A stretch of DNA of 64,000 nucleotides from positions 186,001 to 250,000 of IMG/VR virus record IMGVR_UViG_3300045970_000794; one strand, given 5' to 3'. Numbering within the stretch: position 1 is the first letter of the stretch; each line of letters starts with the position of its first letter. The position numbers and the translations under genes are program-made. Under the pieces are notes generated by a model, which saw only the letters and a program-made list of their open reading frames with translations, was not told the DNA's origin and ran no database searches. Positions 725 to 57,859 of this stretch are shown piece by piece.

Positions 725-1894
725 ATGGCTGCAAGTGAAATTGAGAAAACACGCTTATTTAGACAAGTTAGACATCAACTAGGTGCTCCAATGCGTAAAA
801 TTGAGTTACCAGACGAAAATTTAGTAACTTTATTGGAATTATCTATTGAAGATTACGCTGAATATGTACATAATTGGCTAATAGATAGTCAATGGTCATC
901 ATTTATAGGTCAACCTATTGATACTTTAGATATGGCATTCGCATTAACAACTAGAACATTAGATTTTGAGACACAATTTACTTATGCTTACTCAAAACAA
1001 GTTGGTTTACAAGCTAGAGGTCCATGGGAACTCAAAAAAGATTATGTTGAGATAGAAGCTGGTAGACAAGTTTATGAAATTCCAGCTGGTCGTGAGGTAA
1101 ATCAAGTATTATGGTTAACCCCATCGGTAACTAATCGTGCATTATTTGCTAATTTTGGTGGTTTTGATAACGGTATTGGTGGTGGTTACGCTCAAACTGG
1201 TTTTGGAGTCGGTGGTGGTGGTACTGGTGCTGGTTCTGGTGGTATGGGTGGAAGAGGTGGATATTATATCGCACCAGCATTTGATGTTTTATTGACTGCG
1301 GCCGATATGAATCTTAAACATAGATTATTAAGAAGTGATTTAGTATATAAAATAACCGCTGGGCCTAATGGTACTAAGTTATTACATTTAATTAGCACAC
1401 CAGGTTCTAAAATGACATTCGGTATGGGTGGTCAAGGTGGAAGTATGGCTGGTTCTAGTTCTTTAGGTATTGCTGGATGTCACGTATGGTATCATTATTA
1501 CGATACTAATGGTGATGTTGATGCATGTAGAGCGGCTAATTTAGATATTATTACGATGCCGAATGAAGTACCATTAACTAGATTAGATTTTGATGTGTTA
1601 AATGAACCTACAAAAATATTAATTCGTCAAATATTAACAGCTAGAGCTAAAATAACCTTAGGAAGAACTAGGGGTAAGTTTGGTGGTGTTGTTGGTCCAC
1701 CAGAAGCTGAAAGAACTATGGATTGGGAAAGTTTATTAACTGAAGGTAATGAAGAATATGGTAAAATATTTGAAAGATTAGCTGCTAGGTTAGAGCAAAT
1801 GACTAATACTAAAATGTTAGAGCGAAAAGCTAATGAAGCTGAAAACTTAAATAAAACATTAGCTTATAGACCCTTAGGATTTTACGTTATTTAG
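725..1894 (+). CDS. Neck/head-completion protein (T4 gp13-like)
   Basis: RHQLGAPMRKIELPDE N-terminus and GRTRGKFGGV C-terminal motif typical of gp13-like neck proteins. ATG 725 preferred to TTG 692 because it follows the ATATTTAT motif at 702. Confidence 0.7.
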   Translation: MAASEIEKTRLFRQVRHQLGAPMRKIELPDENLVTLLELSIEDYAEYVHNWLIDSQWSSFIGQPIDTLDMAFALTTRTLDFETQFTYAYSKQVGLQARGPWELKKDYVEIEAGRQVYEIPAGREVNQVLWLTPSVTNRALFANFGGFDNGIGGGYAQTGFGVGGGGTGAGSGGMGGRGGYYIAPAFDVLLTAADMNLKHRLLRSDLVYKITAGPNGTKLLHLISTPGSKMTFGMGGQGGSMAGSSSLGIAGCHVWYHYYDTNGDVDACRAANLDIITMPNEVPLTRLDFDVLNEPTKILIRQILTARAKITLGRTRGKFGGVVGPPEAERTMDWESLLTEGNEEYGKIFERLAARLEQMTNTKMLERKANEAENLNKTLAYRPLGFYVI

Positions 1895-2791
1895 TAATTT
1901 TTTTTCTAATTTTTTAATTATATCTTCATTATACCTAATAATAATTAAAGGGATGCTATTAATATAACAGTATCTCTTTTTTATTTTATCTCTTTTTCTA
2001 ATTGATTTTAGATTATCTAATCCACCCCAATATTTAATTGACCTATAATGTTGTTCACCATTATATTCGATACAAACATTATAATCTGGTAAATAAAAAT
2101 CAAATGGTAACATTATTTTATCTTTACAACCATTAAATCTATGCTGTGGTAAATATTTAATATTATTTATTAATAAAAATTCTCTAATAATTTTTTCACC
2201 CTTTGATGATTTACACTTAGAACACCCTTGACCTTTTAAATGATTACTAGGGGTTTGCTCAAATTCACCATGAATTGAACATATAATTTTAACTTTATTA
2301 TGTGCATTAATATAAATTACATTAGAATAATCATATTTATTTGTGTGAATTTCTAAAGATTTAGTTATGAATTTATCATTTTTAAACCTTTTACTATCAC
2401 CAACTGCTTTCCAACCACATTTTTGACAACCATAACTCTCCAAATGCCATTTAGCTTTTTGTTTAAATTCACCATGTATTGGGCATATTATATCTAAAAC
2501 ACTATGTTTATTTATATAATTAATGTTAGTATAATCGTATTTATTACCATGTTTTTGTTTTGCTTTAATTATAAATTCTTCATTAGTTAATTTTGAGTTT
2601 ATTTTACATTTTGGACATCCACTATTACTTCTTAGATGATTTCTTGGTTCCATTAAAAACTCACCATGTATTGGACATATTATGATTATGTTTTCGTATT
2701 GTGTTATATAATTAGCTTTTGAATAATCATATTTATCACCATGTTTTTGTACTGCTCGTTTAATAAAAATTTCTGTAGTTATCATATTCAT
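1874..2791 (-). CDS. Free-standing endonuclease: three Zn-finger-like repeats (YDYS..IICPIHGEF..GCxKC) plus C-terminal PD-(D/E)xK-like (Vsr/DUF559-type) domain
   Basis: Repeats visible in translation; C-terminal LPFDFYLPDYNVCIEYNGEQHY...RDKIKKRYC...IPLIIIRY. Confidence 0.8.
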   Translation of the reverse strand: MNMITTEIFIKRAVQKHGDKYDYSKANYITQYENIIIICPIHGEFLMEPRNHLRSNSGCPKCKINSKLTNEEFIIKAKQKHGNKYDYTNINYINKHSVLDIICPIHGEFKQKAKWHLESYGCQKCGWKAVGDSKRFKNDKFITKSLEIHTNKYDYSNVIYINAHNKVKIICSIHGEFEQTPSNHLKGQGCSKCKSSKGEKIIREFLLINNIKYLPQHRFNGCKDKIMLPFDFYLPDYNVCIEYNGEQHYRSIKYWGGLDNLKSIRKRDKIKKRYCYINSIPLIIIRYNEDIIKKLEKKLLNNVKS

Positions 2792-2831
2792 TTTATTATA
2801 AATATATTGAAATTAATAAAAGAAATTTTAA

Positions 2832-2870
2832 ACTATGAAATATCGTCCTATGGGATTCTATGTAATATAA
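2832..2870 (+). repeat. Orphan second copy of the neck gene 3' end
   Basis: Reads TMKYRPMGFYVI* versus TLAYRPLGFYVI* at 1856..1894; followed directly by a terminator. Confidence 0.85.
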
Positions 2871-2871
2871 A

Positions 2872-2901
2872 AAAAGCGGGCTAATACCCGCTTTATTTTT
2901 T
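2872..2901. terminator. Intrinsic terminator, probably bidirectional
   Basis: aaaaGCGGG-ctaata-CCCGCtttattttt between convergent genes. Confidence 0.75.
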
Positions 2902-2902
2902 A

Positions 2903-5900
2903 CTAGAAATTCCATTCATCATCGTCTTCGTTAAGAGTTATCTCAGCAACTTCTTGTATTGCTTCGACAATGACCTTTTCCTCTTCGTTAATGGACTGAT
3001 TTGGTTCTACTGATAGTACTGATTCATTTAATACTTTTTGTTGTTCTAAATGTTTTAACCAAAAGTCATAAGGTTTTTTAAGTTCATCATCATTAAGAGT
3101 CTCGTAAAATTCAGCTCTAGTTATGGCTTCATCCTCGTATTTAAATATATCATCTAGCTTACCGATTTCCTCATCGTATTTTTTAGATAGGAATATTAAT
3201 TCACCTTCTTCGTTAACACTTAAATACGCTATATTTACGTAGTTATTAATAACATCTATCGCAACATCATAATCAGAAGCTAATAATTCATTAATATTTT
3301 CTAATTGGTTAGCTTCAAGTCGTTTAATTAAATCATCAATTTTTTTACGTTCGAAAATAAGGTCACCTTCTTTCATTTTAGCTACTCTATCTAAATAGTC
3401 AGCTTTAATTCCTTCCCAATCTTCTAGCGAAACACCAATATCTTCTAGGTTATTTGGTGTTTTATTTACTTTAAGCCAAAATTTAATTTCTTTATCTTCG
3501 AAATTCATTAAATCTTTTTCGTAGTCATCTTGGTCGATTGGTTCATCTGGAATACCAGATACAAGTATACATTCTTCTTCGGTGAATATTTGAGGCTCCG
3601 CTAATGTCATTTTTTTAGTCTTCCTATCGGTTTTAGTTTCAACAAAAATCTTATCACGAATTTCTTTTTTGAATACAACCAATAATGGGGTTATTCGATT
3701 ATTAAATGCTGTTAAATACTTAGCCACATTATATTCTTCTGTGGTTAAATTGGAATCACTTTCAATATCCTCAGTTGGAATCAATTTACAATTTAATTTA
3801 ACGACACCTTTTTCAGTTTTAATATCACCATGTGATTTTTTTTCACCAGTATTAACATAGTAGATTACATCACCTAATTCAACTTTTAAATTATGTAAAA
3901 TTGCTAATTCCATATGTGCTTGCTTAGGCATTGGTTTACCAGCTTTATTAGTTTTTTTACATTTTTTCTTGTATTCATCAATACTAATCTTAACTTTAGA
4001 TTTTGATGCAATTTTAATTAAAGGAATTGAATAACTATAAATCATATCGACATATTTTTGATATAACTCAATAAATTCACTACCTTTATTATCCAATAAT
4101 AATACAATTGCTTCATCTAAAAATTCTTCAATGTATGTTGGCATTTTCTTAGATTTGATAGTATTACCAACCAATTTAATCTTAGTTTTACCTTTTTTGA
4201 TGATTTTATTAGCGTAATTCTTTCTAGCGAAATTAATAGTTGATTCACCGATTTCATCAATATCCAATCCCATTCTACCAATCATGTAAGTATCATTGAA
4301 TTCAGCAACTACAGCTTTTACACCGATATATTCTTTATCTTTTTCATTGAATGAATGTTTTCCATTTGAAATATACGTTATATTATCAATATCCAGTGGT
4401 ATTTCAAAGTTAAAACCATCGGTATTTTTAAGATTAATTAATCCAATTCCACCAATAAAAGTCCCATCATCAGTTGATATGTCATAAACAAAATTATTAA
4501 TATCTTTATTAGAAATTATTTCATTTTTCCAAACTTCATCAGACTTTTTTAATGTTTTTTTAGTAAAACTAGATAAATTACGATTATTATTTTTTAATGA
4601 AAATGAAATAAAATTTTGTTTATCTTTTCTGGTTTTAATTTTATACTCAATATTTAAATTTTTCATTAATAAACCAATACCAGCCATAGCAACTTGAGAC
4701 TTCATACCAATATCTGAACAAGTATCTATAGTATTTCCATAACCATCAGATGCACACACACCTTCTAAAAAATATTTTTTAATATCATTATTAGAATTTA
4801 AAATAATATTAGGTATTTTTTTCTCCCTGTAAGAAGTGTAAAAGTTTTCACAGAAAAATGTTGCGAATGTTGCATTGTGAACAACTAAATTATAGACACT
4901 ACTAGATTTTAAGTGGTTTTTTATTTCAGATTTAATTTTAAATTTAGTTTCTAAAATTAATTTTAATTTCTCCAAAAATTCTAAATTTGAATTGGATATC
5001 TTCCAGTCACTTCGTTTACCTTTATTAATATGTATTTCACCAGTTTTTTTGGACCTATATTTTTGCGTTCTTTTTGAACAATTAGCTGAACCATCACCCA
5101 AGAAAAAACCATATAACCAAGCCTCATCACTTGATATGCTATTTATTGAGTTAAAATCATTTAAATCATTACAAACATCAATCTTATCACCTCTTTTTAA
5201 TTTTGATGGTTTTATTTGAATATTATTCTGAAACAATGAATGGTCTTCAGTTACATTAACTAACCTATCTTTAGTGGTTATTCGGTGAATTGTTTTTTCA
5301 GTTTCATGTCTAAAAACATATTTAATATTTTTCCAACCATTTACAGTTAAAACTTCATATGGTTTAGCTTCAAAATCACGTAATTTATGAGAATCAATAT
5401 AGTTTGAATTTTCATTAAATAAATCACAAATTGGTAATATATCTAACATTCCATTTTTATATCTAATATAAACTGGTGTATCATATGTAACTGAATCACC
5501 CACAAGTGGTATAAAACCATATTTTTCAACAAAGAACTTAACCATAAGTCTTAAATACATTCTACCTCTACATGTTGTTTCTTCAGCCAAATCCATTTGT
5601 GACCATGGGAATACATCTGGCGCACCATAAGAACCGAAGAATGAGTTAGCAAGTATTTTAAGTGGTAATTGTTTTCTATCATAGAAACTACCAGTCTTCG
5701 TATCACCAAGACCATAAGCTTCATTCATCAAAGCTTTGTATTTATCACGATAATCAACAATATAGGTTAATAAACCTTTCATAACACCACTGATATCAAT
5801 ATCAGAGAATATATTCCAAGTTAATTGAGTTTTTGGGTAAAGAGCTGCATAATCGAGTTTTGAATATTTACCAGCTTTACCAACTCTAAGTAATCTTGAT

Positions 5901-7267
5901 AAACCACCAGTAAAATCACGTTTCTTATCAAATTCTGGAATAGCCAAATCATTTTCATATGACCAAGCTAACATTATCAACTTCCAAATGGTTGCAGTAC
6001 CCATGGTAAGGGTACGCATAAATGATGTTGGTAAAATTTTAGATAATAAGAATGATGCTTGATTAAAAATGAAACCTACTTGTTCGGTTTCCCATAAATC
6101 ATCTAAAAGATATCGTTCAGCAATATATTGCCCTGTAACAATTTCATATTCATCTTTAAGTGGTTTATTTTCAGTTATTTTATACCAATCACCATTGACA
6201 TCATTAAATGCATACTCATTTACTTTATCGGACCAAATAGTACCAATCATTCTACCATCATTAATATAAACACGATTTGGTTTATTAATTTCGGAAAATT
6301 TAGTAATATATTTTAATCCAGCTTTTTTAATATCAGAATTAATCGCTTGAGCTCTACGAACTGAATGATAAATGTCGGCAATGTTATATCCCCACATGTA
6401 TGTTTGTTCATAATATTCAGTATCACTACCTAATTTTAATGTTGATTGTTTACGTTTAATTTTAACATTAGGGTTTAATGTTTTTACCATTTTAGTAATA
6501 TCAACATTTAATAATCTACATCTTTCAAAGATATAGTACCAGTCAAATGTTTCTGAATTATAACCTTCAATAATATCTGGCTTTAATGCATCAATAATAC
6601 CAAAAAATGTTTCTAATGCTTGAACTTCTCTACTTAATCTATTTGGACCATCTTCAATTGTTAATATTGTCTCCCACCCACGATTATTTTTAATACCTAT
6701 TTGATTAATATGTGTATTATGTGGGTCTAAACCAGTTGTTTCTAAGTCGAACTGAAGTCTATGCAAATCATTATAATCATCAAATCCCTTGAATAATCGT
6801 TTACCAGATTGAATCATATATTGCTCAATTGGTGGTAATGTCATGAAATTCTTATTACCATTTATCTCACAACCAGCATCTTTAAAGAAATTTAATAATT
6901 GAAGGTAATTTTTGCTTCCAGTGATAAGGTATTTATATCCAGCGGCTAATCGTTGTGGTTCAGTACCTTCATCATTTTTAGTTTTAAGTAATTTAACTTT
7001 AATTTCAGCTTTACGCATTTCATTCTTCAACTTACCTCTATTTCCACCGTATAAATCATCCAATGCGGCTTCTTTCATCCAAAGGAATGGCTTATACTTT
7101 TCTTTTTTGACTATTTTAGTTGAAGTACCATAACCATTTGGTTGGTTAATTATTACTGAAACAGTTTCATCGTAATAATTAGCTTCAATTGCTGTAATGT
7201 ATTTTTGTGGGTCGTGACCATCGAAAAATTGTTCAATAGCCTCAGGTGTAACTTGTTTTTGCTCCAT
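2903..7267 (-). CDS. polB: Family B DNA polymerase containing an intein
   Basis: ExoI FDLETTG, ExoII GYNSETFDW, motif A DYAALYP, motif B KILANSFFG, motif C VGD|TDG split by intein, RKNYA. Likely start MEQKQ at 7267 (ORF track starts 7306). Confidence 0.95.
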   Translation of the reverse strand: MEQKQVTPEAIEQFFDGHDPQKYITAIEANYYDETVSVIINQPNGYGTSTKIVKKEKYKPFLWMKEAALDDLYGGNRGKLKNEMRKAEIKVKLLKTKNDEGTEPQRLAAGYKYLITGSKNYLQLLNFFKDAGCEINGNKNFMTLPPIEQYMIQSGKRLFKGFDDYNDLHRLQFDLETTGLDPHNTHINQIGIKNNRGWETILTIEDGPNRLSREVQALETFFGIIDALKPDIIEGYNSETFDWYYIFERCRLLNVDITKMVKTLNPNVKIKRKQSTLKLGSDTEYYEQTYMWGYNIADIYHSVRRAQAINSDIKKAGLKYITKFSEINKPNRVYINDGRMIGTIWSDKVNEYAFNDVNGDWYKITENKPLKDEYEIVTGQYIAERYLLDDLWETEQVGFIFNQASFLLSKILPTSFMRTLTMGTATIWKLIMLAWSYENDLAIPEFDKKRDFTGGLSRLLRVGKAGKYSKLDYAALYPKTQLTWNIFSDIDISGVMKGLLTYIVDYRDKYKALMNEAYGLGDTKTGSFYDRKQLPLKILANSFFGSYGAPDVFPWSQMDLAEETTCRGRMYLRLMVKFFVEKYGFIPLVGDSVTYDTPVYIRYKNGMLDILPICDLFNENSNYIDSHKLRDFEAKPYEVLTVNGWKNIKYVFRHETEKTIHRITTKDRLVNVTEDHSLFQNNIQIKPSKLKRGDKIDVCNDLNDFNSINSISSDEAWLYGFFLGDGSANCSKRTQKYRSKKTGEIHINKGKRSDWKISNSNLEFLEKLKLILETKFKIKSEIKNHLKSSSVYNLVVHNATFATFFCENFYTSYREKKIPNIILNSNNDIKKYFLEGVCASDGYGNTIDTCSDIGMKSQVAMAGIGLLMKNLNIEYKIKTRKDKQNFISFSLKNNNRNLSSFTKKTLKKSDEVWKNEIISNKDINNFVYDISTDDGTFIGGIGLINLKNTDGFNFEIPLDIDNITYISNGKHSFNEKDKEYIGVKAVVAEFNDTYMIGRMGLDIDEIGESTINFARKNYANKIIKKGKTKIKLVGNTIKSKKMPTYIEEFLDEAIVLLLDNKGSEFIELYQKYVDMIYSYSIPLIKIASKSKVKISIDEYKKKCKKTNKAGKPMPKQAHMELAILHNLKVELGDVIYYVNTGEKKSHGDIKTEKGVVKLNCKLIPTEDIESDSNLTTEEYNVAKYLTAFNNRITPLLVVFKKEIRDKIFVETKTDRKTKKMTLAEPQIFTEEECILVSGIPDEPIDQDDYEKDLMNFEDKEIKFWLKVNKTPNNLEDIGVSLEDWEGIKADYLDRVAKMKEGDLIFERKKIDDLIKRLEANQLENINELLASDYDVAIDVINNYVNIAYLSVNEEGELIFLSKKYDEEIGKLDDIFKYEDEAITRAEFYETLNDDELKKPYDFWLKHLEQQKVLNESVLSVEPNQSINEEEKVIVEAIQEVAEITLNEDDDEWNF
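4424..5494 (-). mobile_element. Intein (357 aa) with LAGLIDADG homing endonuclease in polymerase motif C
   Basis: Starts SVTYDTPVY after VGD; block B VTEDHSL; WLYGFFLGDGS and FLEGVCASDGY; ends VYDIST...INLKN before T(+1)DG. Confidence 0.92.
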
Positions 7268-7346
7268 ATGTATATAAAAAAATTCAGAAATAATGTAGAA
7301 ATACAAAATAACTTAATTTTTTCGTAAAAAGCAATAAAAAACGTAA

Positions 7347-7385
7347 TTATTTTATACTACCATCTAAAACATGTAATTTTAATGT
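7347..7385 (-). repeat. Orphan second copy of the 3' end of the BppU-like gene (8757..9152)
   Basis: Reads TLKLHVLDGSIK* versus TLTIHVLDADIKNR* at 8757..8801; 8 of 12 residues identical. Confidence 0.7.
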
Positions 7386-7422: not shown

Positions 7423-7451
7423 TATTTGTGGGAACATTGTTCCCACAAATA
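7423..7451. promoter_or_regulatory. Perfect 14-bp inverted repeat, candidate operator
   Basis: TATTTGTGGGAACA-T-TGTTCCCACAAATA; overlaps ATATTTAT (7416) and TATATTTG (7421); ends 21 nt before ATG 7473. Confidence 0.65.
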
Positions 7452-7472
7452 ACATTAATTAACTTATATGCC

Positions 7473-8045
7473 ATGAGAGAAGAAGAAATTAAAATTAGAA
7501 TATCATCGGACATTAAAACGGATTTTCAAAATATATGTGAAATTGAAAATACAACGATGTCTAATAAATTAACTGGATTTATTATTGATGAAATACATCG
7601 CAAAATAATTAAAACATTGGATAATAATACAATAACTAAACGTTTAATTAAATTTGGGATTAATAAAGGGGGTAGGTTCTATCAAAAGAATGAATTACTT
7701 AAAATTATATTGGATGAAGATGGTTTTGAAATATCTCATCTAGATTTTTTAAATAAAAAGACGTTATATGGTCAATTTGGTTTCCATTCTGAGGGTGATG
7801 TAATACATAAATATAATGCAACTCACTCTATCAAAAATCTTAGAATTGATGGTGATTGGTTAATTGGTGATATTACCATTTTGAATCCATCTATACTACC
7901 AGTATTGGATAATTTAGTTTTTAGACCTCGTTCATTTGGTATTATTAGTGAAAACGGTATTGTTAAAGATTTGGAGATAATCGGTTTTGATGCTATACTT
8001 AAAACAGATGATAAATTTATTGATTATGGTGATGAAGATATGTAG
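7473..8045 (+). CDS. RHH-like N-terminus fused to a degenerate prohead-protease (gp21-like) domain
   Basis: N-terminal EIKIRISSDIKTDFQNICE..TMSNKL; INKGGRFY, LYGQFGFH, ATHSIKNLRIDGDWLIGDITI, FRPRSFG and LEIIGFDAI align by eye with the protease at 59567..60268. Confidence 0.65.
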   Translation: MREEEIKIRISSDIKTDFQNICEIENTTMSNKLTGFIIDEIHRKIIKTLDNNTITKRLIKFGINKGGRFYQKNELLKIILDEDGFEISHLDFLNKKTLYGQFGFHSEGDVIHKYNATHSIKNLRIDGDWLIGDITILNPSILPVLDNLVFRPRSFGIISENGIVKDLEIIGFDAILKTDDKFIDYGDEDM

Positions 8046-8760
8046 TAAATGTCAATTACCTAAAGAATTGACTGAATTTAATAAACGAAGTAATTCTAAG
8101 GATGGTTTACGTTATGAATGTAAGTCATGTCAAAAATTAATTTATGAACAAAAAAGAGAATATTACATTATTAAAATGAAAAATAATCGTATTAAACACA
8201 TTGATGAATATGCTAAACGAGATAGAGAATATTATGAAACTAATCGAAATGGTATATTATATCAGAAAAAAGAATATTATAAAGAAAATAGAAATGAAAT
8301 ATTAATAAAGAAAAAAGAATATGATAAAGAAAATAGTGAACATAAAAAAGAATATAATAAAAATTATCGTAAAAATAATAAACCTAAACTAATGAAGTAT
8401 GCTAGGGATTACTCAAAAGAATGGCGTAAAACACATTCACATATTGTAGCTTGGAGGCGTGTACTATCATGCTCATTAAAAAGATTAAATAAATCAAAAG
8501 AAGGTCATACCATTGATTTACTAGGATATTCACCACACCAATTAAAAGAGCATTTAGAATCACTATTTACTGATGGTATGTCATGGGATAATTATGGTGA
8601 ATGGCATATTGACCATAAAATACCAGTTTGTAGCTTTTCAGCTGATACACCACCTAGTGTTGTAAATGCATTAAGTAATTTACAACCATTATGGGCTACC
8701 ACAAGGGAAATAAATGGGATTATTTACGAAGGTAATTTAAATAAATGGAAATATGATTAA
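7987..8760 (+). CDS. HNH homing endonuclease with N-terminal CxxC..CxxC finger; true start probably near 8026-8032
   Basis: KICSKC..ECKSC; GMSWDNYGEWHIDHKIP...NLQPLW..NLNK; paralog of 55292..55975. Confidence 0.85.
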   Translation: MMLYLKQMINLLIMVMKICSKCQLPKELTEFNKRSNSKDGLRYECKSCQKLIYEQKREYYIIKMKNNRIKHIDEYAKRDREYYETNRNGILYQKKEYYKENRNEILIKKKEYDKENSEHKKEYNKNYRKNNKPKLMKYARDYSKEWRKTHSHIVAWRRVLSCSLKRLNKSKEGHTIDLLGYSPHQLKEHLESLFTDGMSWDNYGEWHIDHKIPVCSFSADTPPSVVNALSNLQPLWATTREINGIIYEGNLNKWKYD

Positions 8761-9152
8761 CGATTTTTAATATCCGCATCCAAGACATGGATTGTTAAAG
8801 TATCTCTAATTGGTACTATCAGTGTTCCGATTACTTCCATATCATTTAATCCACCTAAAAATTCAATAGTGAATTGTCCACGATATGTTCCAGCTCTATT
8901 AGTATCTTTAGTTCTAAATGTATAGGTTACATAATATTCTTCAGTCATATCCAATGGAGTATCTAGTTTTAACTCACACCCAGCTGGTCGTTTTGCAACC
9001 TTAATTAAACCAGTATCAACATCAACCATACTGAAGTAAACGTTGGAGTTTTGTATTTGCTCGTGAAATGCTTTATAGTCATTTCTACCATCTTGAATTA
9101 ATTCCATCTTCAAAATATTTAATGTAGCACCTTTATTTATGAAAAAATCCAT
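8757..9152 (-). CDS. BppU-like baseplate/Ig-like virion protein
   Basis: MDFFINKGATLNILKMEL...YTFRTKDTNRAGTYRGQFTIEF..TLIVP pattern; end of the tail-fibre operon. Confidence 0.5.
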   Translation of the reverse strand: MDFFINKGATLNILKMELIQDGRNDYKAFHEQIQNSNVYFSMVDVDTGLIKVAKRPAGCELKLDTPLDMTEEYYVTYTFRTKDTNRAGTYRGQFTIEFLGGLNDMEVIGTLIVPIRDTLTIHVLDADIKNR

Positions 9153-9861
9153 ATAATTCACTGATTTTAATTTTATTATTTATTCTTTCAGTTACATTAA
9201 TTAATAACATTTGTGGTGAAAATAATGAGCTAGAACCTTTAGAAAGATTTTCAAAACTCGGAATCGCCCTTAAATTAATAATATCAGCAACTATTTTAAC
9301 ATCTAAATTAACCATAAAACAATCTTTTATTGATACTATATGGTCTATATGGTAATCATTCAGACCTTTACCTACTTTATCTAAATTTTCAATTTGTGTA
9401 GAGCATTGTTTTATAGTTTTTTTAGTATAATATTTAACCCTACTCTTATATTTATAAAATTCTGATTTAGTTTTTAAATATTCATCATATTCAATACCAT
9501 ATTTAGTTTTAAACATTTTAACCATTGATTTATTTCTATCAATATATTTATGGTCTCGTTTAATTATTGGTAAATTTTTTAATTTTATTATTTTATTTAA
9601 AGTATCATATTTAATACCACACTCAATTGCAATTGTTTTTAATGTTTTAGTTTTATCATAATAAATAGATAATACTTTTGAAATAATTCCTTCATTTAAA
9701 TATTTTATATTAACCCCACCACGTTTTTTTCTATTACATTTCATACATAATGTATTTTTATTCGTGGTAGATTTATAACTATCTTTTCGTGTGTAAGTTA
9801 TATTTTCACCACACCCGTCAGTTGGGCATTTACGTTCGAATATTTTATTATCAGTTGTCAT
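9133..9861 (-). CDS. HNH homing endonuclease
   Basis: N-terminal CPTDGC..CMKC; C-terminal YHIDHIVS...NLRAIPSFENLSKG. Confidence 0.8.
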   Translation of the reverse strand: MTTDNKIFERKCPTDGCGENITYTRKDSYKSTTNKNTLCMKCNRKKRGGVNIKYLNEGIISKVLSIYYDKTKTLKTIAIECGIKYDTLNKIIKLKNLPIIKRDHKYIDRNKSMVKMFKTKYGIEYDEYLKTKSEFYKYKSRVKYYTKKTIKQCSTQIENLDKVGKGLNDYHIDHIVSIKDCFMVNLDVKIVADIINLRAIPSFENLSKGSSSLFSPQMLLINVTERINNKIKISELYGFFHK

Positions 9862-9881
9862 ATGATTATAAATATAACACT

Positions 9882-27159: not shown

Positions 27160-27197
27160 ACTTTAGTTTTTTCCAAAAAATCATATATTTATAATAT

Positions 27198-50425: not shown

Positions 50426-50428
50426 ATT

Positions 50429-52036: not shown

Positions 52037-52040
52037 CAAA

Positions 52041-52376: not shown

Positions 52377-52383
52377 CCTTTAA

Positions 52384-52959
52384 TTGGTATATTTATATAG
52401 AAATGTATTAATTGTGAATTTATCAGATAAACTACATAATAAATTGACTCAATATCTATTCGAAAATAGTCAGTTTACCAATTGGGTTATGCCTTCCGAT
52501 GAAGATTTAGCTTTAGAGTATAATCTTGAATATGAAATGAAGCATTTAGGTTCATATATTCAAGATGTTATGGATGAATACGGTTACGATACTGGTGATA
52601 GTATTTTCCCTAATGCAATGTCTTTTGTTAAAGCAGCTAAAGCTGGACGAGTTATAATGGTTGATAAATCGTTAGATAATCTAATTGATTATCGTTCAAA
52701 TTGTAATTCTATTGAATGTTTAATTTCATTGATTAAAGGGTATCGTTCATATCCAAAATATAGGAATGAAGATACTATTAATGCAATGGCCCAAGGATTC
52801 GACCAAAATAAACCAATGAAATTACCAATCGTACTGAAATTTTCAGATGATGAATATAGGGTAATGGGTGGAAATACTAGAATGGACATGGCTTTTATTA
52901 AAGGCATTAACCCAAAAGTATTGGTGGTTGATTTAAGAAGATTTGCTAAGAAATTATAA
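52384..52959 (+). CDS. ParB/sulfiredoxin-like domain protein; start probably near 52414
   Basis: PIVLK..YRVMGGNTRMDMA. Confidence 0.55.
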   Translation: MVYLYRNVLIVNLSDKLHNKLTQYLFENSQFTNWVMPSDEDLALEYNLEYEMKHLGSYIQDVMDEYGYDTGDSIFPNAMSFVKAAKAGRVIMVDKSLDNLIDYRSNCNSIECLISLIKGYRSYPKYRNEDTINAMAQGFDQNKPMKLPIVLKFSDDEYRVMGGNTRMDMAFIKGINPKVLVVDLRRFAKKL

Positions 52960-53280
52960 TTTATTTAATATATCTTTCATAGCCTCATCAATTGTTTTAC
53001 CAATATATTTTTGACTCCTACAGAAATTAACTTGGCATTTACCTAATTCATTACTTTCTTTACCAGTTGGCTTAAATTCAAGACTTCTAGTGTTATTTCC
53101 CCATATTTTATAATCCCGTAACATTTCAGTGCCACAGCATTCTGAGTTACAACCAAGAGACATACAGTGATTATCAGCGACAAAAAATTTAAGATTATAT
53201 TTTTCACATAATTCTTTAGCTAAATTAATGTACTCTTCTTTTTTTACTTTATCCATTTCCCAATCAGAACCAGTTTTCAT
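52954..53280 (-). pseudogene. Cys-rich ORF resembling an isolated C-terminal part of a radical-SAM-like protein
   Basis: AKELCEKYNLKFFVADN..ECCG; no CxxxCxxC motif; in-frame stop about 8 codons upstream of the ATG. Confidence 0.3.
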
Positions 53281-53336
53281 ACCATAATTTCTTTTCCATG
53301 ATTAAAATATAACCAGTGGAAAATATAAGTAAATAA

Positions 53337-53364
53337 AAAAGCCACACGTTAATGTGGCTTTCTT
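53337..53364 (-). terminator. Intrinsic terminator
   Basis: aaaaGCCACAcgttaaTGTGGCttt. Confidence 0.7.
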
Positions 53365-53790
53365 TTATTTATCTCCCCCGACTAAAAGTACGAAGGTATA
53401 CGTACCATTACAATCACCATCGGCAAACCATTCTTTAGTTTTACCAGTTGTTATTGCATAAATAGTTTTATAACCTTTTTTAGCTTTCAACGTGGTATTT
53501 GACCAACCATCTAACACACCTTTAGAAACACCATCAACATAAACTTCAACCATATATCCTGTGTTGTTAGCAATTTCAATTGAGCATTCTTTAGAACCAC
53601 GTGTTCTTTGTTGGTCCAAAGCTGGGTCTTCTAATGGATTGTCATCATTAGTTGTTATCGCTGTTTTAATCATTGGATTATTCCAAGCTTCACGAACAAC
53701 ATTTTTTGATTTAACTTCCACTTTCAATTCTTGTGCGAATGAACTTCCAACGAAGGTCATAATTGCAATTAATAATAATAATTTTTTCAT
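53365..53790 (-). CDS. Secreted protein with Sec signal peptide
   Basis: MKKLLLLIAIMTFVGSSFA|Q; C-terminal beta domain (NNTGYMVEVYVDG). Confidence 0.7.
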   Translation of the reverse strand: MKKLLLLIAIMTFVGSSFAQELKVEVKSKNVVREAWNNPMIKTAITTNDDNPLEDPALDQQRTRGSKECSIEIANNTGYMVEVYVDGVSKGVLDGWSNTTLKAKKGYKTIYAITTGKTKEWFADGDCNGTYTFVLLVGGDK

Positions 53791-53845
53791 TTTTAATTTG
53801 TTTTTATATTAATAAAATAACTAATGAAAAGGTAACCACAAAAAA

Positions 53846-53877
53846 AAAGCCCTACATTACTGTAAGGCTTTTCTTTA
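53846..53877 (-). terminator. Intrinsic terminator after the orphan capsid 3' end
   Basis: aaaGCC(C)TACA-ttac-TGTAAGGCttt flanked by A and T tracts. Confidence 0.65.
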
Positions 53878-53892
53878 TTTATCTAGAAGAGA

Positions 53893-53961
53893 TTATCTCA
53901 ATTCATTGATGTTGAATGTAGGAACACCATCTACTCTTACATGCCCGTAAAACCTGTTGTT
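53893..53961 (-). repeat. Orphan, synonymously recoded copy of the major capsid gene 3' end
   Basis: Encodes NNRFYGHVRVDGVPTFNINELR*, identical to 56072..56140; 11 of 69 nt differ, all silent. Confidence 0.95.
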
Positions 53962-53964
53962 AAA

Positions 53965-53996
53965 TTTGCATTTTTAAAATAATTTTAGTATCTTTG
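53965..53996 (+). promoter_or_regulatory. Bacteroidota-type promoter of the Zn-finger nuclease gene
   Basis: TTTG-N20-TATCTTTG, 5 nt before ATG 54002. Confidence 0.75.
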
Positions 53997-54001
53997 TATT
54001 T

Positions 54002-55318
54002 ATGAAAAAATTAACAAATGAAGCGTTTTTTAAAGGAATAGAAAAAGAACATGGGGATAAATATGATTATTCTAAACTTGAGTATATAAATATGAGTACT
54101 AAAGTAACTATCATATGTCCAATACATGGCGAATTTAAGCAAAGACCACATAATCATGTAGAAGGTAAAGGGTGTCCTAAATGTGGATTTGATAGAACAA
54201 GAAATAGTAAAGTTAAAACAACTAATAAATTTATTGCACAAGCCAATGAAATTCACAATAATAAATATGATTATTCTAAAACCAATTATACAACTGGTAT
54301 TATAAAAGTAATTATTATATGTCCAATACACGGTGAATTTAAACAAGACCCATATAACCACCTACAAGGTAAGGGGTGCCCTAAATGTGGTAAAGTTTAT
54401 AAACCAACAACAGAAGAGTTCATTCAAAAAGTTAGGGGAGTTCATGGAGATAAATATGATTATTCTTTATTTAAATATGTTACCAGTTCAACAGCAAGTG
54501 AAATAATATGTCCAATACATGGAAAATTTAAACAAACACCACAAAACCACCTTAAAGGGAAAGGCTGTTTTAAATGTGGTAAAGCTTATGCTAGTAGGTA
54601 AAGAAGATATAAATTAGATGATGTTATTATTAAATTAAAAAATAAAGGGTTTTATGATGAATCATATAAATATGAAGAAATTTTATTTATAGATGGTGGG
54701 TCGAAAATGTTAATTACTAATAAATATACTAATACAAAACATATTACACCAGTACACAATATATTAAGACGAAAAACTAATTGTTGTTTTGATAATGCTA
54801 TTAATAAACAAGAATACCTTATTAGTATGAGTAATATTGTTCATGATAATAAATATAATTATTCTAAAGTTAATTATAAATCAGCTATATTTAAAATTAT
54901 AATTACATGTCCTACGCATGGTGATTTTAAACAAACTTTTAATTCACATTTAAGAGGTTCTGGGTGTCCTAGATGTTCTGATAGTAAAGGTGAGAAAAAA
55001 ATAAGAAAATTACTAAAGAGTAATGATATTATATTTATCCATCAATATAAATTTAATAATTGTAAGAATGTAAGACCTTTACCTTTTGATTTTTATTTAC
55101 CAGATTATAACGTGTGTATTGAATATAATGGAAAACAACATTATGAACCGATTAAACATTTTGGTGGTAAAAAACAATTAATTTATATACAAAAAAATGA
55201 TAAAATTAAACAAGAATTTTGTGAAAAAGAAGGTATTAAATTAATCACTGTAAAATATAATGAAGATATTGAAGAACGATTAACCGAAGAGTTAAAGAAT
55301 TTGAGTTCCTTTACTTAA
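54002..55318 (+). pseudogene. Zn-finger-repeat PD-(D/E)xK-like endonuclease interrupted by one in-frame TAA
   Basis: ORFs 54002..54601 and 54707..55318 are in one frame; only TAA 54599-54601 interrupts. C-terminus PFDFYLPDYNVCIEYNG matches 1874..2791. Confidence 0.8.
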
Positions 55319-55975
55319 ATTGTCCTCACCCCATAATGGTTGAAGATTATCCAAACGCCAACACTCCTTAAACTCTAGGTCATCAGTACTTTCAAACATA
55401 AAACTATTCATCGGTTTTTTATGGTCTACATGCCACTCACCATAATTATCCCACGTCATTCCATCGGTAAATAAGTTCTCTAAATGAATCATCAATTCTT
55501 CGATACTATAACCTAATAATGCAAATGTTTTATTCGTCTTATTAACATTACGTTCTTTAAGCATTTGCCATACCGCTGTGCGTGTTCTAACACCTAAACG
55601 ATACTTTGGGTCCTCAGCACGTCTTTTACGCTCATAATCACGCTTATATTTGTTTACATGTTCTTTATTTTCATCTCTCCAACTTGAGTGATACTTTCGC
55701 AATTCTTTTCTATTTTCGTTAGACCATTCTTTATGGTATTCGCTAAGGTCTTCTTTATTTTTTTCATAATAACGTTTAGCGGCAGCTGGTTTCCCACCTA
55801 TAAATCGTTTACCAGAAGGTCCAAACACAACACCGTTTTCTTTAAGTGTTCTAATTATTATCGTTTTATGTATACCCATTCGTTCACTAATAGTCGTAGA
55901 CCCAAGTAATTTATCATTATACATTTTCAAACACTCTTGTGTTTGCTCTGGTGTTAATTCTATTTTTTTACTCAT
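55292..55975 (-). CDS. HNH homing endonuclease with N-terminal HTH
   Basis: GMTWDNYGEWHVDHKKP..NLQPLWGEDNLSKG; own TATCTTTG promoter at 55979-55986 (minus). Confidence 0.85.
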   Translation of the reverse strand: MSKKIELTPEQTQECLKMYNDKLLGSTTISERMGIHKTIIIRTLKENGVVFGPSGKRFIGGKPAAAKRYYEKNKEDLSEYHKEWSNENRKELRKYHSSWRDENKEHVNKYKRDYERKRRAEDPKYRLGVRTRTAVWQMLKERNVNKTNKTFALLGYSIEELMIHLENLFTDGMTWDNYGEWHVDHKKPMNSFMFESTDDLEFKECWRLDNLQPLWGEDNLSKGTQIL

Positions 55976-56022
55976 ATACAAAGATACTAATAATAGTTTA
56001 TAAAGTCAAGTAATATTAACAA

Positions 56023-56048
56023 AAAAGGTGGAGATAAATCCACCTTTT
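56023..56048 (-). terminator. Terminator of the major capsid gene
   Basis: aaaaGGTGGA-gataaa-TCCACCtttt. Confidence 0.75.
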
Positions 56049-56071
56049 AAGTTTTATATTATCAAGAGTGA

Positions 56072-57859
56072 TTATCTCAACTCATTAATATTGAATGTAG
56101 GTACACCATCAACTCTTACGTGACCATAGAAACGGTTGTTCACAACTTTCTTAGCGTAACGTGTCATTATACCCTTAACAGGGGCAAAGTTGAATGGGTT
56201 GTACATTGTTGGAGTAAGTTGCAAAGGCACGTATGGTGCGTAGATGTAACCAGTATCCAATAATGATTTACCTTTATGACCGATAATCATTGAGTAGTAA
56301 GGAGCATAAGGGTCACGATACACTTGGTAACGTCCACTTAATGAACCAATTCTTTCAATACCCATGTTGTATTGGTCTTGTTCTGGACTTGCGTCAGAAA
56401 CGTGGAAATATTCTAAATCGTCAAATATAGCACTGATTTCAGAAGATACAACGATGAAGTTAGCACCACCTCTAAGTGTAGATTTATGGATTTGTGCTGA
56501 AATTTGGTTAACTTTAGTTAATAAAGTTTGATTCCAGTCTTTTTGAGTGTAAGGACTTGCAGCTGTAGAAGCTTTTCTCCAACCTTGGTAATCCCATCTC
56601 ATTTGCCATGCAGCAGCTTTACGTAAATCACGAAGGATTTCACGGTCAATTTCAGCAGCTACTTGTTCAGACAACATAGCAGTCAATTCAGCTTCAGCAT
56701 CGATGTTGTGGAATGCACTAACGTCTTGAGCCAATTCTGGTGACCATGTTGCACGTAATTTTCTTTCTTCAACAGATACAACAACTTCGTCAAGTTTGAA
56801 AGAAATTTCAGCAAGTTCAGTTTCTAATTCAAGAGTTGCATAAGTTGCATATGATACTGTAAATGCAGTTGCACCAGTTGCAGCATAAGTACTAGAACTT
56901 ACAGCTCCAACATAACCATCATATGTAGATGTACCGTTAGATGATACTGGGTGACTTAAATCAAGGTCTAAATACATAATACCTTCAGCGTCACAAATAT
57001 CAGTATATTCAACAATACCTTTACCGTATTTTTGAGTTACAATTCTAAATGGAACTTCAGCATTTTGTGCAATGATTACTTTACCATCTGGGTCAGTAAT
57101 TGCAGCGTTTGCACTAACAATTTTAAGACCAGCTAAGAAGCTTTCAGTATCCATTGGATGTCCATCAGGTCCGTTTAATCTACCAGCACCACTACCAGTG
57201 AAACCAGTTACTTTAAGGATTACGTTTCTGATTGAACCATCAACTGCGTAAGTTGGGGTTGTTGCATTAGCCCAAACACCATTAGCATTTAATGTAACAG
57301 GTTGAGTCAATGTCATTGCATTGATAGTTATTGTACCTTTTGAGTTGTCAAATAAACCATCATTGTAATATAAATCGTAAAGTGATTTACTTCTGAAAGT
57401 TGTTTCTAAACAACCATCAATAACACAACTTGGAAGTTGTCCAACAGCCATACCAGTGTGAGCTGAATATGTTGCACCGTCAATCCATGGGTCACCATAA
57501 GTTCCAGTTGAATTATTTGTTCTGTAAGAAGTTTGTGGTACGAAGAAGAACAATTTACCAATTGGCATGTTCAACGCTTGTACAGACACGATATCGTTAG
57601 CTAAAAGCTTAGAGAATACTCTTCTTACGATAGGGAATACTACTGTTTCGAAAGAACCAGAAGAATCCGCTGTAGTGTTTTCGGTTAATAAAGTACTAGC
57701 TTGGTTTTCATAAAGCTGAGCAATATTTTCCTTAACGTGGCCTTTAAGACCTTCTAAGAATCCAAGAGATTCCCATTTTTCTTGAGTCATTTTACGGATA
57801 ACTTTCATGTGGTTTAATCCAATGTTACCTACTTGACCTGATGTTAATAAATGTCCCAT
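56072..57859 (-). CDS. Major capsid protein (T4 gp23-like)
   Basis: PIVRRVF..VSVQ..P.GKLF; RKLRATWSPELAQD..DAEAEL..EIDREI; YAPYVPL..GIMTRY. Confidence 0.97.
   Translation of the reverse strand: MGHLLTSGQVGNIGLNHMKVIRKMTQEKWESLGFLEGLKGHVKENIAQLYENQASTLLTENTTADSSGSFETVVFPIVRRVFSKLLANDIVSVQALNMPIGKLFFFVPQTSYRTNNSTGTYGDPWIDGATYSAHTGMAVGQLPSCVIDGCLETTFRSKSLYDLYYNDGLFDNSKGTITINAMTLTQPVTLNANGVWANATTPTYAVDGSIRNVILKVTGFTGSGAGRLNGPDGHPMDTESFLAGLKIVSANAAITDPDGKVIIAQNAEVPFRIVTQKYGKGIVEYTDICDAEGIMYLDLDLSHPVSSNGTSTYDGYVGAVSSSTYAATGATAFTVSYATYATLELETELAEISFKLDEVVVSVEERKLRATWSPELAQDVSAFHNIDAEAELTAMLSEQVAAEIDREILRDLRKAAAWQMRWDYQGWRKASTAASPYTQKDWNQTLLTKVNQISAQIHKSTLRGGANFIVVSSEISAIFDDLEYFHVSDASPEQDQYNMGIERIGSLSGRYQVYRDPYAPYYSMIIGHKGKSLLDTGYIYAPYVPLQLTPTMYNPFNFAPVKGIMTRYAKKVVNNRFYGHVRVDGVPTFNINELR

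What the first reader, a model, noticed from the sequence alone, without database searches (positions are those of the whole stretch)
1856..56140. Recurrent nuclease cassettes that appear to replace the 3' ends of structural genes
Seen: three loci share one layout - structural gene with intact 3' end, then a convergent nuclease cassette with its own promoter motif, then an orphan copy of the last 12-22 codons plus stop. The loci are neck (1856-1894 vs 2832-2870), BppU-like (8757-8801 vs 7347-7385) and major capsid (56072-56140 vs 53893-53961). The copies are conserved as protein but differ at silent positions. Two unrelated nuclease folds are involved (Zn-finger PD-(D/E)xK-like and HNH). Inference: the nuclease cuts near the end of an essential gene, and the cassette supplies a recoded, cleavage-resistant new end while displacing the old one. 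That would be homing into essential genes without splicing. 3'-end replacement is known for some fungal mitochondrial homing endonucleases; I do not know of it as a repeated antisense strategy in phage head and neck genes.
Basis: partly seen in the sequence, partly recalled or inferred. Interest (0 to 1): 0.9.

Follow-up and report, generated by a model that had tools for sequence, protein, structure and literature searches.

The report
Phage nuclease cassettes replacing gene ends
In this uncultured T4-like phage and its relatives, selfish nuclease genes sit inside the last 12-70 codons of conserved genes, bring a substitute gene end with them and leave the old end stranded downstream, so they can invade coding sequence without an intron or intein.

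Summary
Three window genes are each followed by a nuclease cassette and then an untranslatable copy of their last 12-22 codons: the 400-aa "neck" protein, a 134-aa protein and the Gp23-type major capsid protein (MCP).

Two pairs stand far above background. The third is confirmed by a profile of relatives' tails.

- At the neck locus, 68 relatives have the empty state and no duplicate. All 4 alleles carrying the nuclease gene have the orphan.
- Empty alleles match the orphan and its flank, not the working copy.
- The HNH cassette type does the same at an SNF2-like helicase in two other phages. There the new tail is a distinctive variant that travels with the cassette.
- One phage keeps new tail plus orphan with no nuclease, which looks like a scar.

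The best reading is homing by 3'-end replacement. Cleavage and resistance of the recoded end are inferred, not shown.

- Targets are not only head and neck genes.
- The capsid-locus HNH is co-directional, not convergent.
- That locus is composite and its polarity is unresolved.
- Two duplicates lack a nuclease.

The known precedent is fungal mitochondria. I found no phage precedent. I rate it a new variant of a known kind.

The parts
692..1894 (+). Its function is not established.
   Evidence: ORF. The only family hit is a weak one to phrog_211, head-tail adaptor (E=1.8e-5). 80 homologues of 60-66% identity in IMG/VR always lie convergent with PolB.
1856..1894 (+). Working (proximal) tail of gene 1, TLAYRPLGFYVI*. 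Its last 21 nt overlap the nuclease gene's 3' end in antisense.
   Evidence: The nuclease gene's stop codon is the reverse complement of the Leu TTA codon of PLGF. The same holds in L122 and L135.
1874..2791 (-). Homing-endonuclease-like gene of 305 aa: three DUF723 zinc-finger modules plus a Vsr-like nuclease domain.
   Evidence: Pfam DUF723; phrog_559 and phrog_9084. Invariant residues D..E..G.QH..D..K (A3). AF2 pLDDT 88. Foldseek top matches are Vsr 1cw0 and I-Bth0305I 3r3p.
2796..2805 (-). ATATTTATAA, a promoter-like motif 5 nt upstream of the nuclease gene's ATG.
   Evidence: The motif is found 17 times against 5.6 expected, with 0 of 100 shuffles reaching 17. Most copies lie 5-35 nt before gene starts.
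2832..2870 (+). Orphan copy of the gene-1 tail (TMKYRPMGFYVI*). Stops precede it, so it is not translated as part of a gene.
   Evidence: It starts about 40 nt from the nuclease gene's ATG, as in L122, L135 and L172.
2873..2894 (.). Bidirectional terminator hairpin shared by the old gene-1 end and PolB.
2903..7306 (-). Family-B DNA polymerase carrying a LAGLIDADG intein. It is the conserved downstream flank of loci 1 and 2.
   Evidence: Pfam DNA_pol_B_exo1 and LAGLIDADG_3. Residues about 606-960 are absent from most relatives.
7347..7385 (-). Orphan copy of the gene-2 tail (TLKLHVLDGSIK*), about 40 nt upstream of the PolB start.
   Evidence: Best PSSM hit in the whole window, 22.2 bits. 44 relatives end this gene 1-154 nt before PolB with ...VLDGSIKK*.
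7428..8045 (+). Accessory ORF of cassette 2. The likely start is the ATG at 7474, and by eye the N-terminus looks like a ribbon-helix-helix.
   Evidence: No family hit. Its N-terminal ~50 aa recur next to HNH257-like genes in L117 and L145.
7987..8760 (+). HNH/EndoVII-like nuclease gene of 257 aa. Its stop overlaps the stop of gene 2 by 4 nt.
   Evidence: phrog_1035 at E=7e-22. An HNH motif (GEWHIDHK...N...LQPLW) is visible in the sequence. No Pfam hit.
8757..8801 (-). Working tail of gene 2 (TLTIHVLDADIKNR*), which is atypical for the clade.
8757..9161 (-). Target gene 2: a 134-aa conserved protein of unknown function. 'BppU-like' is not supported.
   Evidence: No Pfam or PHROG hit. Homologues of 47-61% identity lie directly upstream of PolB in 44 relatives.
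53838..53880 (-). Hairpin plus T-run after the capsid orphan, terminator-like by eye.
   Evidence: Read from the sequence. The scan did not flag it.
53893..53961 (-). Orphan copy of the last 22 codons of the capsid gene. A stop lies 4 codons upstream and there is no start codon.
54002..55318 (+). DUF723/Vsr-like nuclease gene in a single frame, interrupted by one TAA at 54599-54601. This yields ORFs of 199 aa and 203 aa. Its ATG lies 40 nt from the orphan.
55292..55981 (-). HNH/EndoVII-like gene of 229 aa, on the same strand as the capsid gene.
   Evidence: phrog_1035. Homologues of 45-77% identity lie directly after the capsid gene in about 22 of 80 relatives, with no orphan.
56023..56048 (.). 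Terminator hairpin directly after the working capsid gene end.
56072..56140 (-). Working tail of the capsid gene (NNRFYGHVRVDGVPTFNINELR*).
56072..57859 (-). Target gene 3: Gp23-type major capsid protein of 595 aa.
   Evidence: Pfam Gp23 at E=1.4e-70.

Best explanation
These are free-standing homing-endonuclease cassettes that live inside the 3' end of conserved phage genes.

Anatomy
- The mobile unit is a substitute gene end, the nuclease gene and its upstream region. The substitute end has the same or nearly the same protein sequence with different codons.
- The nuclease gene usually lies antisense, with its own 3' end abutting or overlapping the substitute end.
- The unit sits at a fixed point 12-70 codons before the stop of the target gene.
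- The target therefore stays intact, reading into the imported end.
- The original end is pushed downstream. It remains there as an untranslated orphan, still attached to its original terminator and neighbouring gene.

Inferred mechanism
- The nuclease cuts cassette-free alleles of co-infecting relatives at or near that point.
- The break is repaired from the occupied genome. The gene body serves as the left homology arm and the orphan as the right arm, so the cassette is copied in.
- Occupied alleles are immune, because the site is split and the imported half is recoded.
- The codon differences also reduce recombination between the two copies, which would otherwise delete the cassette.

Two unrelated nuclease types use this layout: DUF723 zinc-finger arrays with a Vsr-like domain, and HNH genes with a small accessory ORF.

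Shown: the anatomy, the presence/absence polymorphism, the orphan being ancestral, and the new end travelling with the cassette.
Inferred: cleavage, the cut position, and resistance of the recoded end.
For: (1) Duplicates are real and beyond chance.

(2) Neck locus
- 68 relatives with PolB visible show the gene convergent with PolB, with no nuclease gene and no duplicate.
- All 4 occupied alleles have an orphan about 40 nt beyond the nuclease ATG: the window, L122, L135 (=L171) and L172.
- Fisher test, as run with all 76 non-occupied relatives as the empty class: p=6e-7. With only the 68 where PolB is visible my hand count gives about 1e-6.

(3) Empty alleles match the orphan
- The L122 orphan matches L111, L107 and L129 at 56-57 of 60 nt. 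The working copy matches at 42-44 of 60.
- The L135 orphan matches L127 and L130 at 54 of 60 nt. The working copy matches at 47-49 of 60.
- Alignments A1 and A2 continue from the orphan into the terminator and the PolB end.

(4) Identity to the nearest empty relative drops over the last ~100-150 nt of the working gene.

(5) The nuclease stop codon overlaps the target's recoded tail by 4-48 nt in every duplicate-bearing locus measured (L122, L135, L172, L191, L205, L228 and window loci 1 and 2). It also does so in three loci without an orphan (L173, L207, L246). It does not in L186.

(6) Codon differences between the copies are mostly synonymous: 0 nonsynonymous of 10 at the window capsid gene and 0 of 12 in L015. 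This means both copies evolved as coding sequence in different genomes. It argues against drift after a local duplication.

(7) Generality
- The same layout occurs at other targets with the same nuclease family: L191, L205 (phrog_1745), L228 (DruA-like) and L186 (NAMPT, more distant copy).
- The HNH cassette shows it at an SNF2-like helicase in L145 and L117. The orphan there spans about 70 aa and scores 242 and 226, against a background of 36 or less.

(8) About 74 single-copy relatives have orphan-type helicase tails. The three working copies in L117, L135 and L145 share one distinctive variant.

(9) L135 keeps the new tail plus the orphan with no cassette, as expected after loss of the nuclease gene.

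(10) Nuclease assignments.
Against: - No cleavage data exist, and the cut site is only guessed from the junction.
- For the window's capsid locus, no relative is close enough to say which copy is ancestral.
- That locus is composite. An HNH gene that in about 22 relatives sits after the capsid gene without any duplicate lies between the working tail and the DUF723 gene.
- L015 has the same capsid-tail duplicate around a GNAT-type gene with no nuclease.
- L068 shows a tail duplicate made by ordinary tandem duplication.
- Many members of the nuclease family abut a gene end with no detectable orphan: 28 of 34 convergent cases.
- A fourth DUF723 gene at the window's left edge has no orphan.
- The window's neck orphan is 12 codons long, against 26 in L122 and L135.
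- The capsid-locus DUF723 gene has a premature stop, so it may be inactive.
Confidence: 0.75

Rival explanations
1. The association is a coincidence. Gene-end duplicates arise by ordinary tandem duplication, or by recombination at repeated tail-plus-terminator sequences as when morons are inserted. Nuclease genes then settle in the resulting non-essential spacer.
For: L068 carries a tandem duplication that includes an upstream gene tail. In L015 a GNAT-type cargo is flanked by tail plus near-identical terminators. The HNH229 family sits after the capsid gene without duplicates in about 22 relatives.
Against: - The association at the neck locus is perfect: 4 of 4 occupied against 0 of 68 empty.
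- The nuclease ORF physically overlaps the recoded tail.
- The copies differ mostly at synonymous sites, so they come from different alleles.
- Three phages share the same unusual helicase tail linked to the cassette.
- The non-nuclease insertion in L157 has no duplicate.
Confidence: 0.1
2. The anatomy is the same, but the main role is interference competition rather than spread of the cassette. The nuclease destroys or excludes co-infecting relatives that carry the sensitive gene end, and the recoded end is the self-immunity allele kept by the phage.
For: Targets are conserved and probably essential genes. Recoded working tails are present. Marker exclusion by phage homing endonucleases is documented for T4 (PMC2988022).
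Against: The presence of the orphan as a right-hand homology arm, and its ancestral type, are expected for homing but are not needed for pure exclusion. The two roles do not exclude each other.
Confidence: 0.1
3. The orphan is functional: a spliced or otherwise used alternative gene end, or a conserved RNA element.
For: Orphans keep an intact reading frame and protein-level conservation.
Against: - Rfam finds no intron or other RNA family in the window.
- The working gene reads through to a normal conserved end and has its own terminator.
- Stops precede the orphans and no start codon is present.
- Conservation is at the protein level, not the base level.
Confidence: 0.03
4. The layout is a metagenome assembly artefact, with two strain variants of a gene end joined in tandem.
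For: The window is a metagenome-assembled contig seen in one sample only.
Against: The same layout, with the same junction positions, appears in independent assemblies from other samples: L122, L135/L171, L172, L191, L205, L228, L117 and L145. The nuclease ORFs are intact and overlap the working tail in frame.
Confidence: 0.02

Closest known systems
Partial C-terminal duplications of fungal mitochondrial genes (for example atp6 and cob) flanking free-standing LAGLIDADG or GIY-YIG endonuclease ORFs
   Same: The host gene stays intact. A partial copy of its C-terminal segment lies downstream, with homing-endonuclease ORFs between the two (PMC6279837, read). From my own knowledge, the classic Allomyces atp6 case is read as an element that brings a new C-terminus and displaces the old one.
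   Different: - These are phage genomes, not organelles.
- The nuclease families differ: DUF723 with a Vsr-like domain, and HNH/EndoVII-like.
- The nuclease gene is usually antisense and overlaps the new end 3'-to-3', rather than being fused in frame to it.
- The orphans are short, 12-70 codons.
T4 seg/mob free-standing homing endonucleases ('intronless homing')
   Same: Free-standing nuclease genes occur sporadically among related T4-like phages. They spread by break repair with co-conversion of flanks. Immunity comes from sequence differences at the target (PMC2988022).
   Different: - T4 elements sit between genes and cut hundreds to thousands of bp away, or split a gene into two polypeptides.
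- The T4 review does not mention duplication of the target's end: 'duplicat' occurs 0 times.
- Here the cassette sits inside the ORF and carries a replacement end.
I-Bth0305I / EDxHD homing endonucleases (Vsr-like fold)
   Same: The nuclease domain model matches Vsr (1cw0, probability 1.0) and the I-Bth0305I catalytic domain (3r3p, probability 0.98). Both occur in phages.
   Different: - I-Bth0305I is encoded in a group I intron. No intron is detected here.
- The Foldseek E-values are weak (about 0.02) and no Pfam model passes its threshold.
- The DNA-binding part here is a DUF723 zinc-finger array.
T5orf172 homing endonucleases with CapR/DUF723 zinc-finger arrays in ICP1-like phages
   Same: They have repeated DUF723-type zinc-finger DNA-binding modules, and they cluster next to essential genes at the boundaries of genetic exchange (PMC10448857).
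   Different: The catalytic domain there is T5orf172 (GIY-YIG-like), not Vsr-like. That paper, as searched, does not describe replacement or duplication of target-gene ends.

Membership tests
Free-standing homing endonuclease gene | Encodes a nuclease domain of a type used by homing endonucleases | tested here: met
   DUF723 genes: phrog_559 and phrog_9084, and a Vsr/I-Bth0305I-like fold. HNH genes: phrog_1035 and a visible HNH motif. Pfam hits to the catalytic domains are all below threshold.
Free-standing homing endonuclease gene | Sporadic presence or absence at one conserved site among related genomes | tested here: met
   Neck locus: 4 occupied, 68 empty. p134 locus: 1 occupied, 44 empty. 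Helicase locus: 2 occupied, 1 scar, 75 single-copy.
Free-standing homing endonuclease gene | Site-specific cleavage of the cassette-free allele, with the occupied allele immune | not testable with these tools
   This needs purified protein and reconstructed substrates.
Free-standing homing endonuclease gene | Co-conversion of flanking target sequence with the nuclease gene | tested here: inconclusive
   Identity to the nearest empty relative falls over the last ~100-150 nt of the working gene. Three phages share the cassette-linked helicase tail. No donor-recipient pair is close enough to map a conversion tract.
Organelle-type 3'-end replacement element | A partial C-terminal copy of the host gene lies downstream of the endonuclease ORF | tested here: met
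Organelle-type 3'-end replacement element | The downstream copy is the ancestral end and the working copy is the imported one | tested here: met
   Met at the neck locus in L122 and L135, at p134 in the window, and at the helicase in L117 and L145. Unresolved for the window's capsid locus.
Organelle-type 3'-end replacement element | The endonuclease ORF is fused in frame to, or co-directional with, the host gene | tested here: not met
   The DUF723 and HNH257 genes are antisense, with 3'-to-3' overlap or abutment. This defining feature comes from my own knowledge of the fungal cases.
Group I intron- or intein-borne endonuclease | The endonuclease sits within a self-splicing intron or an in-frame intein | tested here: not met
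   No Rfam family matches in the window. The target ORFs read through to a normal end. The nuclease genes are on the opposite strand or lie after a terminator.
EDxHD (I-Bth0305I) endonuclease family | Vsr-like catalytic fold with the family's conserved acidic and histidine residues | tested here: inconclusive
   The fold match has probability 0.98-1.0 but E about 0.02. The invariant residues are D, E, Q-H, D and K. The canonical EDxHD spacing was not verified.
T4 seg/mob type | GIY-YIG or HNH_3 catalytic domain, with intergenic insertion | tested here: not met
   No such Pfam domains were found. The insertion point lies inside the target ORF.

The most novel reading that the evidence does not exclude
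Tail replacement is a widespread, so far undescribed third route by which homing endonucleases invade protein-coding sequence in phages, alongside introns and inteins.
- The nuclease gene and the substitute gene end are welded together by an antisense 3'-to-3' overlap.
- The displaced end serves as the built-in right homology arm.
- Loss of the nuclease leaves recognisable scars of new tail plus orphan, which mark past invasions.

If this is right, target sites and the immunising substitutions of hundreds of uncharacterised nucleases could be read directly from genome sequence.
Probability: 0.45. Interest if true: 0.75.

Novelty: new variant of a known kind. Interest (0 to 1): 0.62.

Why it matters
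- It explains how free-standing nuclease genes can target the inside of essential, conserved phage genes without a splicing element.
- It gives a sequence-only way to locate their insertion points. The target sites are probably at those points.
- It identifies a source of mosaic gene ends and short orphan gene fragments in phage genomes, which annotation pipelines would miscall.
- It adds the antisense overlap as a plausible retention device, because deleting the nuclease gene would truncate the host gene's end.
- It gives a comparison point for the organellar cases.

Tried and rejected
- Group I intron or other RNA family: Rfam finds nothing in the window.
- Near-identical phage genomes: no megablast match. 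The best capsid relatives among deposited phages are about 40-43% identical.
- Exact-protein look-up of the capsid protein returns only the window's own 362-kb contig.
- The downstream 141-aa gene used as a handle for empty capsid alleles returned only the window's own contig in IMG/VR and nothing in the metagenomes.
- The variable capsid region against metagenomes gave 80 loci, none above about 62% identity and none with a tail duplicate.
- DNA comparison of the capsid tails with 26 relatives does not tell the working copy from the orphan.
- The Bacteroidetes-type promoter TTTG-N17-21-TAnnTTTG is not enriched: 4 found, 5 expected. Sigma-70-like sites are below the shuffled expectation.
- Single-sequence AF2 of the 203-aa ORF failed, with pLDDT 30. 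The PDB sequence searches gave nothing useful.
- False positives of the tail scan were set aside:
  - L043, L010 and L021 are paralogous full-length genes with similar ends.
  - L134 is a set of antisense ORFs of a repetitive gene.
  - L039 is a tandem repeat.
- The 242-aa neighbour was too divergent for the locus search.
- Five literature searches and three papers searched for the relevant terms found organellar precedents only. This is not proof that no phage report exists.

Full report
**Source and setting.** The window has 30% G+C. It is part of a 362-kb metagenome contig, JGI 3300045970 / IMGVR_UViG_3300045970_000794. The phage is T4-like, with a Gp23-type major capsid protein. No deposited phage is close: megablast finds nothing, and the best capsid matches are about 40-43% identical, from Flavobacterium and Microcystis myophages.

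**Checking the observation.** All three loci are as described.

- Locus 1. Gene 692..1894(+) ends TLAYRPLGFYVI*. A 305-aa gene lies antisense at 1874..2791 and overlaps the last 21 nt of that gene. At 2832-2870 lies TMKYRPMGFYVI*, preceded by stops and followed by a bidirectional terminator at 2873-2894.
- Locus 3. The capsid gene 56072..57859(-) and the fragment at 53893-53961(-) encode the same 22 residues. They differ at 11 bases in 10 codons, all synonymous.
- In a stop-anchored comparison of all 68 ORF tails with the six-frame window, these two pairs score 54 and 64. No other tail exceeds 30.
- Locus 2. Gene 8757..9161(-) ends TLTIHVLDADIKNR*, and the orphan at 7347-7385(-) reads TLKLHVLDGSIK*. 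This pair is not significant by self-similarity, scoring 32 against a control maximum of 35.
- A profile built from the tails of 24 distinct homologues in relatives ranks the locus-2 orphan first in the whole window. It scores 22.2 bits, above the gene's own tail at 17.9 bits and the next hit at 8.5 bits.

**The nucleases.**

- The genes at 1874..2791 and 54002..55318 have three or four DUF723 zinc-finger modules and a C-terminal domain.
- That domain has invariant residues D..E..G.QH..D..K (A3). An AF2 model with pLDDT 88 best matches Vsr and the I-Bth0305I catalytic domain, with high probability but weak E-values. Sub-threshold Pfam hits are all to PD-(D/E)xK-type families.
- The capsid-locus copy has one in-frame TAA.
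- The genes at 7987..8760 and 55292..55981 are HNH/EndoVII-like (phrog_1035).

**The comparative test at the neck locus.**

- Eighty IMG/VR relatives of the 400-aa gene all place it convergent with PolB.
- In 68 of them PolB is visible directly downstream, with no nuclease gene and no tail duplicate.
- Apart from the window, only L122 and L135 of the 80 carry a homologue of the 305-aa gene (51-53% identical). A separate search with the nuclease-domain alignment added L172.
- In each it is antisense and abuts the gene end, and each has an orphan tail about 40 nt beyond the nuclease ATG.
- The Fisher test, run with all 76 non-occupied relatives as the empty class, gives p=6e-7.
- The L122 orphan matches the tails of its nearest empty relatives at 56-57 of 60 nt. 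The working copy matches at 42-44 of 60.
- For L135 the figures are 54 of 60 against 47-49 of 60.
- Alignments A1 and A2 show that empty alleles run from the gene body straight into orphan-like sequence, the terminator and the PolB 3' end. The orphan's left edge is at the same codon (-26) in both phages.
- Identity of the working gene to the nearest empty relative falls over its last 100-150 nt.
- The nuclease stop codon is the reverse complement of the Leu TTA codon in PLGF in the window, L122 and L135. The substitute end and the nuclease gene are therefore physically one piece.

**The p134 locus.**

- In 44 relatives the gene ends 1-154 nt before PolB, with ...VLDGSIKK*.
- The window's orphan has this common form. 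Its working tail (..LDADIKNR*) does not.
- L157 has an anti-restriction-like gene inserted at the same place, without any duplicate.

**Generality.**

- A search with the nuclease-domain alignment gave 79 loci.
- In 34 of 77, a convergent ORF abuts or overlaps the nuclease stop.
- Orphans above the null (maximum 34) occur at the neck gene and in L191 (34 codons). L205 (phrog_1745 protein) and L228 (DruA-like) score 34 and 33, at the null maximum and above its 99th percentile of 28.
- L186 (NAMPT) has a more distant copy.
- The HNH cassette also recurs. In L145 and L117 an accessory ORF plus an HNH257-like gene lies antisense after an SNF2-like helicase. It is followed by an orphan of about 70 aa of the helicase C-terminus, scoring 242 and 226 against a background of 36 or less.
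- Seventy-five relatives have a single copy. About 74 of them are orphan-type.
- The working copies in L117, L135 and L145 share one distinctive tail variant. The new end therefore travels with the cassette.
- L135 has that new tail directly followed by the orphan, with no cassette. This is what loss of the nuclease gene should leave behind.

**What remains unsettled.**

- The capsid locus is composite, in this order: working tail, its own terminator, HNH gene, DUF723 gene (convergent, with its ATG 40 nt from the orphan), orphan, hairpin.
- About 22 relatives have the HNH gene after the capsid gene with no orphan.
- Capsid-tail duplicates are rare, at 2 of about 140 loci. The other is L015. 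It has the same boundary, 12 synonymous and 0 nonsynonymous differences, near-identical terminators, and a GNAT-type cargo rather than a nuclease.
- L015 may be a cassette whose cargo was replaced. The short similarity of the two orphan junctions in A4 is only suggestive.
- No relative is close enough to say which capsid copy is ancestral.
- L068 shows that tail duplicates can also arise by plain tandem duplication.
- A fourth DUF723 gene upstream of the neck gene has no orphan.

**Mechanism.**

- The all-synonymous differences at the capsid gene (0 of 10, and 0 of 12 in L015) argue that the two copies diverged as coding sequence in different genomes. If a local duplicate had drifted, the untranslated copy should have collected replacement changes.
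- Combined with the evidence that the orphan is ancestral, the most economical model is homing by 3'-end replacement.
- In that model the nuclease cuts empty alleles near the junction. Repair uses the gene body and the orphan as the two homology arms.
- The occupied allele is immune because the site is split and half of it is recoded.
- The cutting step, and resistance of the recoded end, are inferred.

**Comparison with what is known.**

- Partial C-terminal duplications of fungal mitochondrial atp6 and cob, with endonuclease ORFs between the copies, are documented (PMC6279837).
- The T4 paradigm has intergenic insertion with distant cleavage, or genes split into pieces. The T4 review never mentions duplication (PMC2988022).
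- The ICP1 study describes DUF723/CapR arrays on T5orf172 nucleases next to essential genes, but no replacement of gene ends (PMC10448857).
- Five literature searches found no phage report.
- I therefore rate this a new variant of a known kind: the organellar strategy in phages, with different nucleases and an antisense 3'-to-3' overlap.

**Promoter claim.** ATATTTATWA is enriched three-fold and lies 5-35 nt before many starts, including the locus-1 nuclease gene. A one-mismatch copy precedes cassette 2. There is none before 54002. Generic sigma-70 and Bacteroidetes patterns are not enriched.

Noticed in passing
window 2903-7306 (-), about residues 606-960: The family-B DNA polymerase carries a LAGLIDADG-type insertion (Pfam LAGLIDADG_3) that most relatives lack and about 10 of 80 have. 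It is probably an intein.
   Followed up: partly
window 3-305 (-), which is L082 5024..5791: A fourth DUF723/Vsr-like nuclease gene lies antisense just upstream of the 400-aa gene. Homologues sit at the same place in L129, L130, L145, L147 and L149. I found no orphan tail.
   Followed up: partly
window, 17 sites, for example 662-671, 9866-9875, 27185-27194, 59446-59455, 60283-60292 and 62046-62055: The motif ATATTTATWA is three-fold enriched and sits 5-35 nt before many gene starts, especially head genes. It is a candidate phage promoter or translation-start signal.
   Followed up: partly
L135 3656..5503 and 5490..5717: An SNF2-like helicase ends in the cassette-type tail and is followed directly by an orphan of the common tail type, with no nuclease gene between them. 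This looks like a scar left by a lost cassette.
   Followed up: partly
L089 4498..5952, L101 and L112 4293..5942, L115 4196..5806, L043 9798..11276: DUF723 zinc-finger arrays are fused to a different C-terminal domain (..ADRRWS..LYEKLGF..), with or without the Vsr-like domain. They match phrog_3339 and phrog_559. L043 8093..9805 gives a weak, sub-threshold GNAT hit in Pfam.
   Followed up: no
L102 and L103, 6001-7617: The homologue of the 400-aa gene is about 450 nt longer than in all other relatives, so it may carry an insertion.
   Followed up: no
L068 4436..6235: A small signal-peptide protein gene has been tandemly duplicated, and the duplication carried along the last 13 codons of the upstream HNH gene.
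   Followed up: partly
L039 1037-1600 (-): A gene end (VVRFVQPWNIPL*) is repeated three more times at a spacing of about 80-160 nt downstream.
   Followed up: no
window 7427-7446: A perfect 8-bp hairpin (GTGGGAAC att GTTCCCAC) lies between the promoter-like motif and the likely ATG (7474) of the cassette-2 accessory ORF.
   Followed up: no
L157 11024..12262: A 412-aa anti-restriction-like gene (phrog_7245, HExxH motif) is inserted between the 134-aa gene and PolB in one relative, without duplication.
   Followed up: partly
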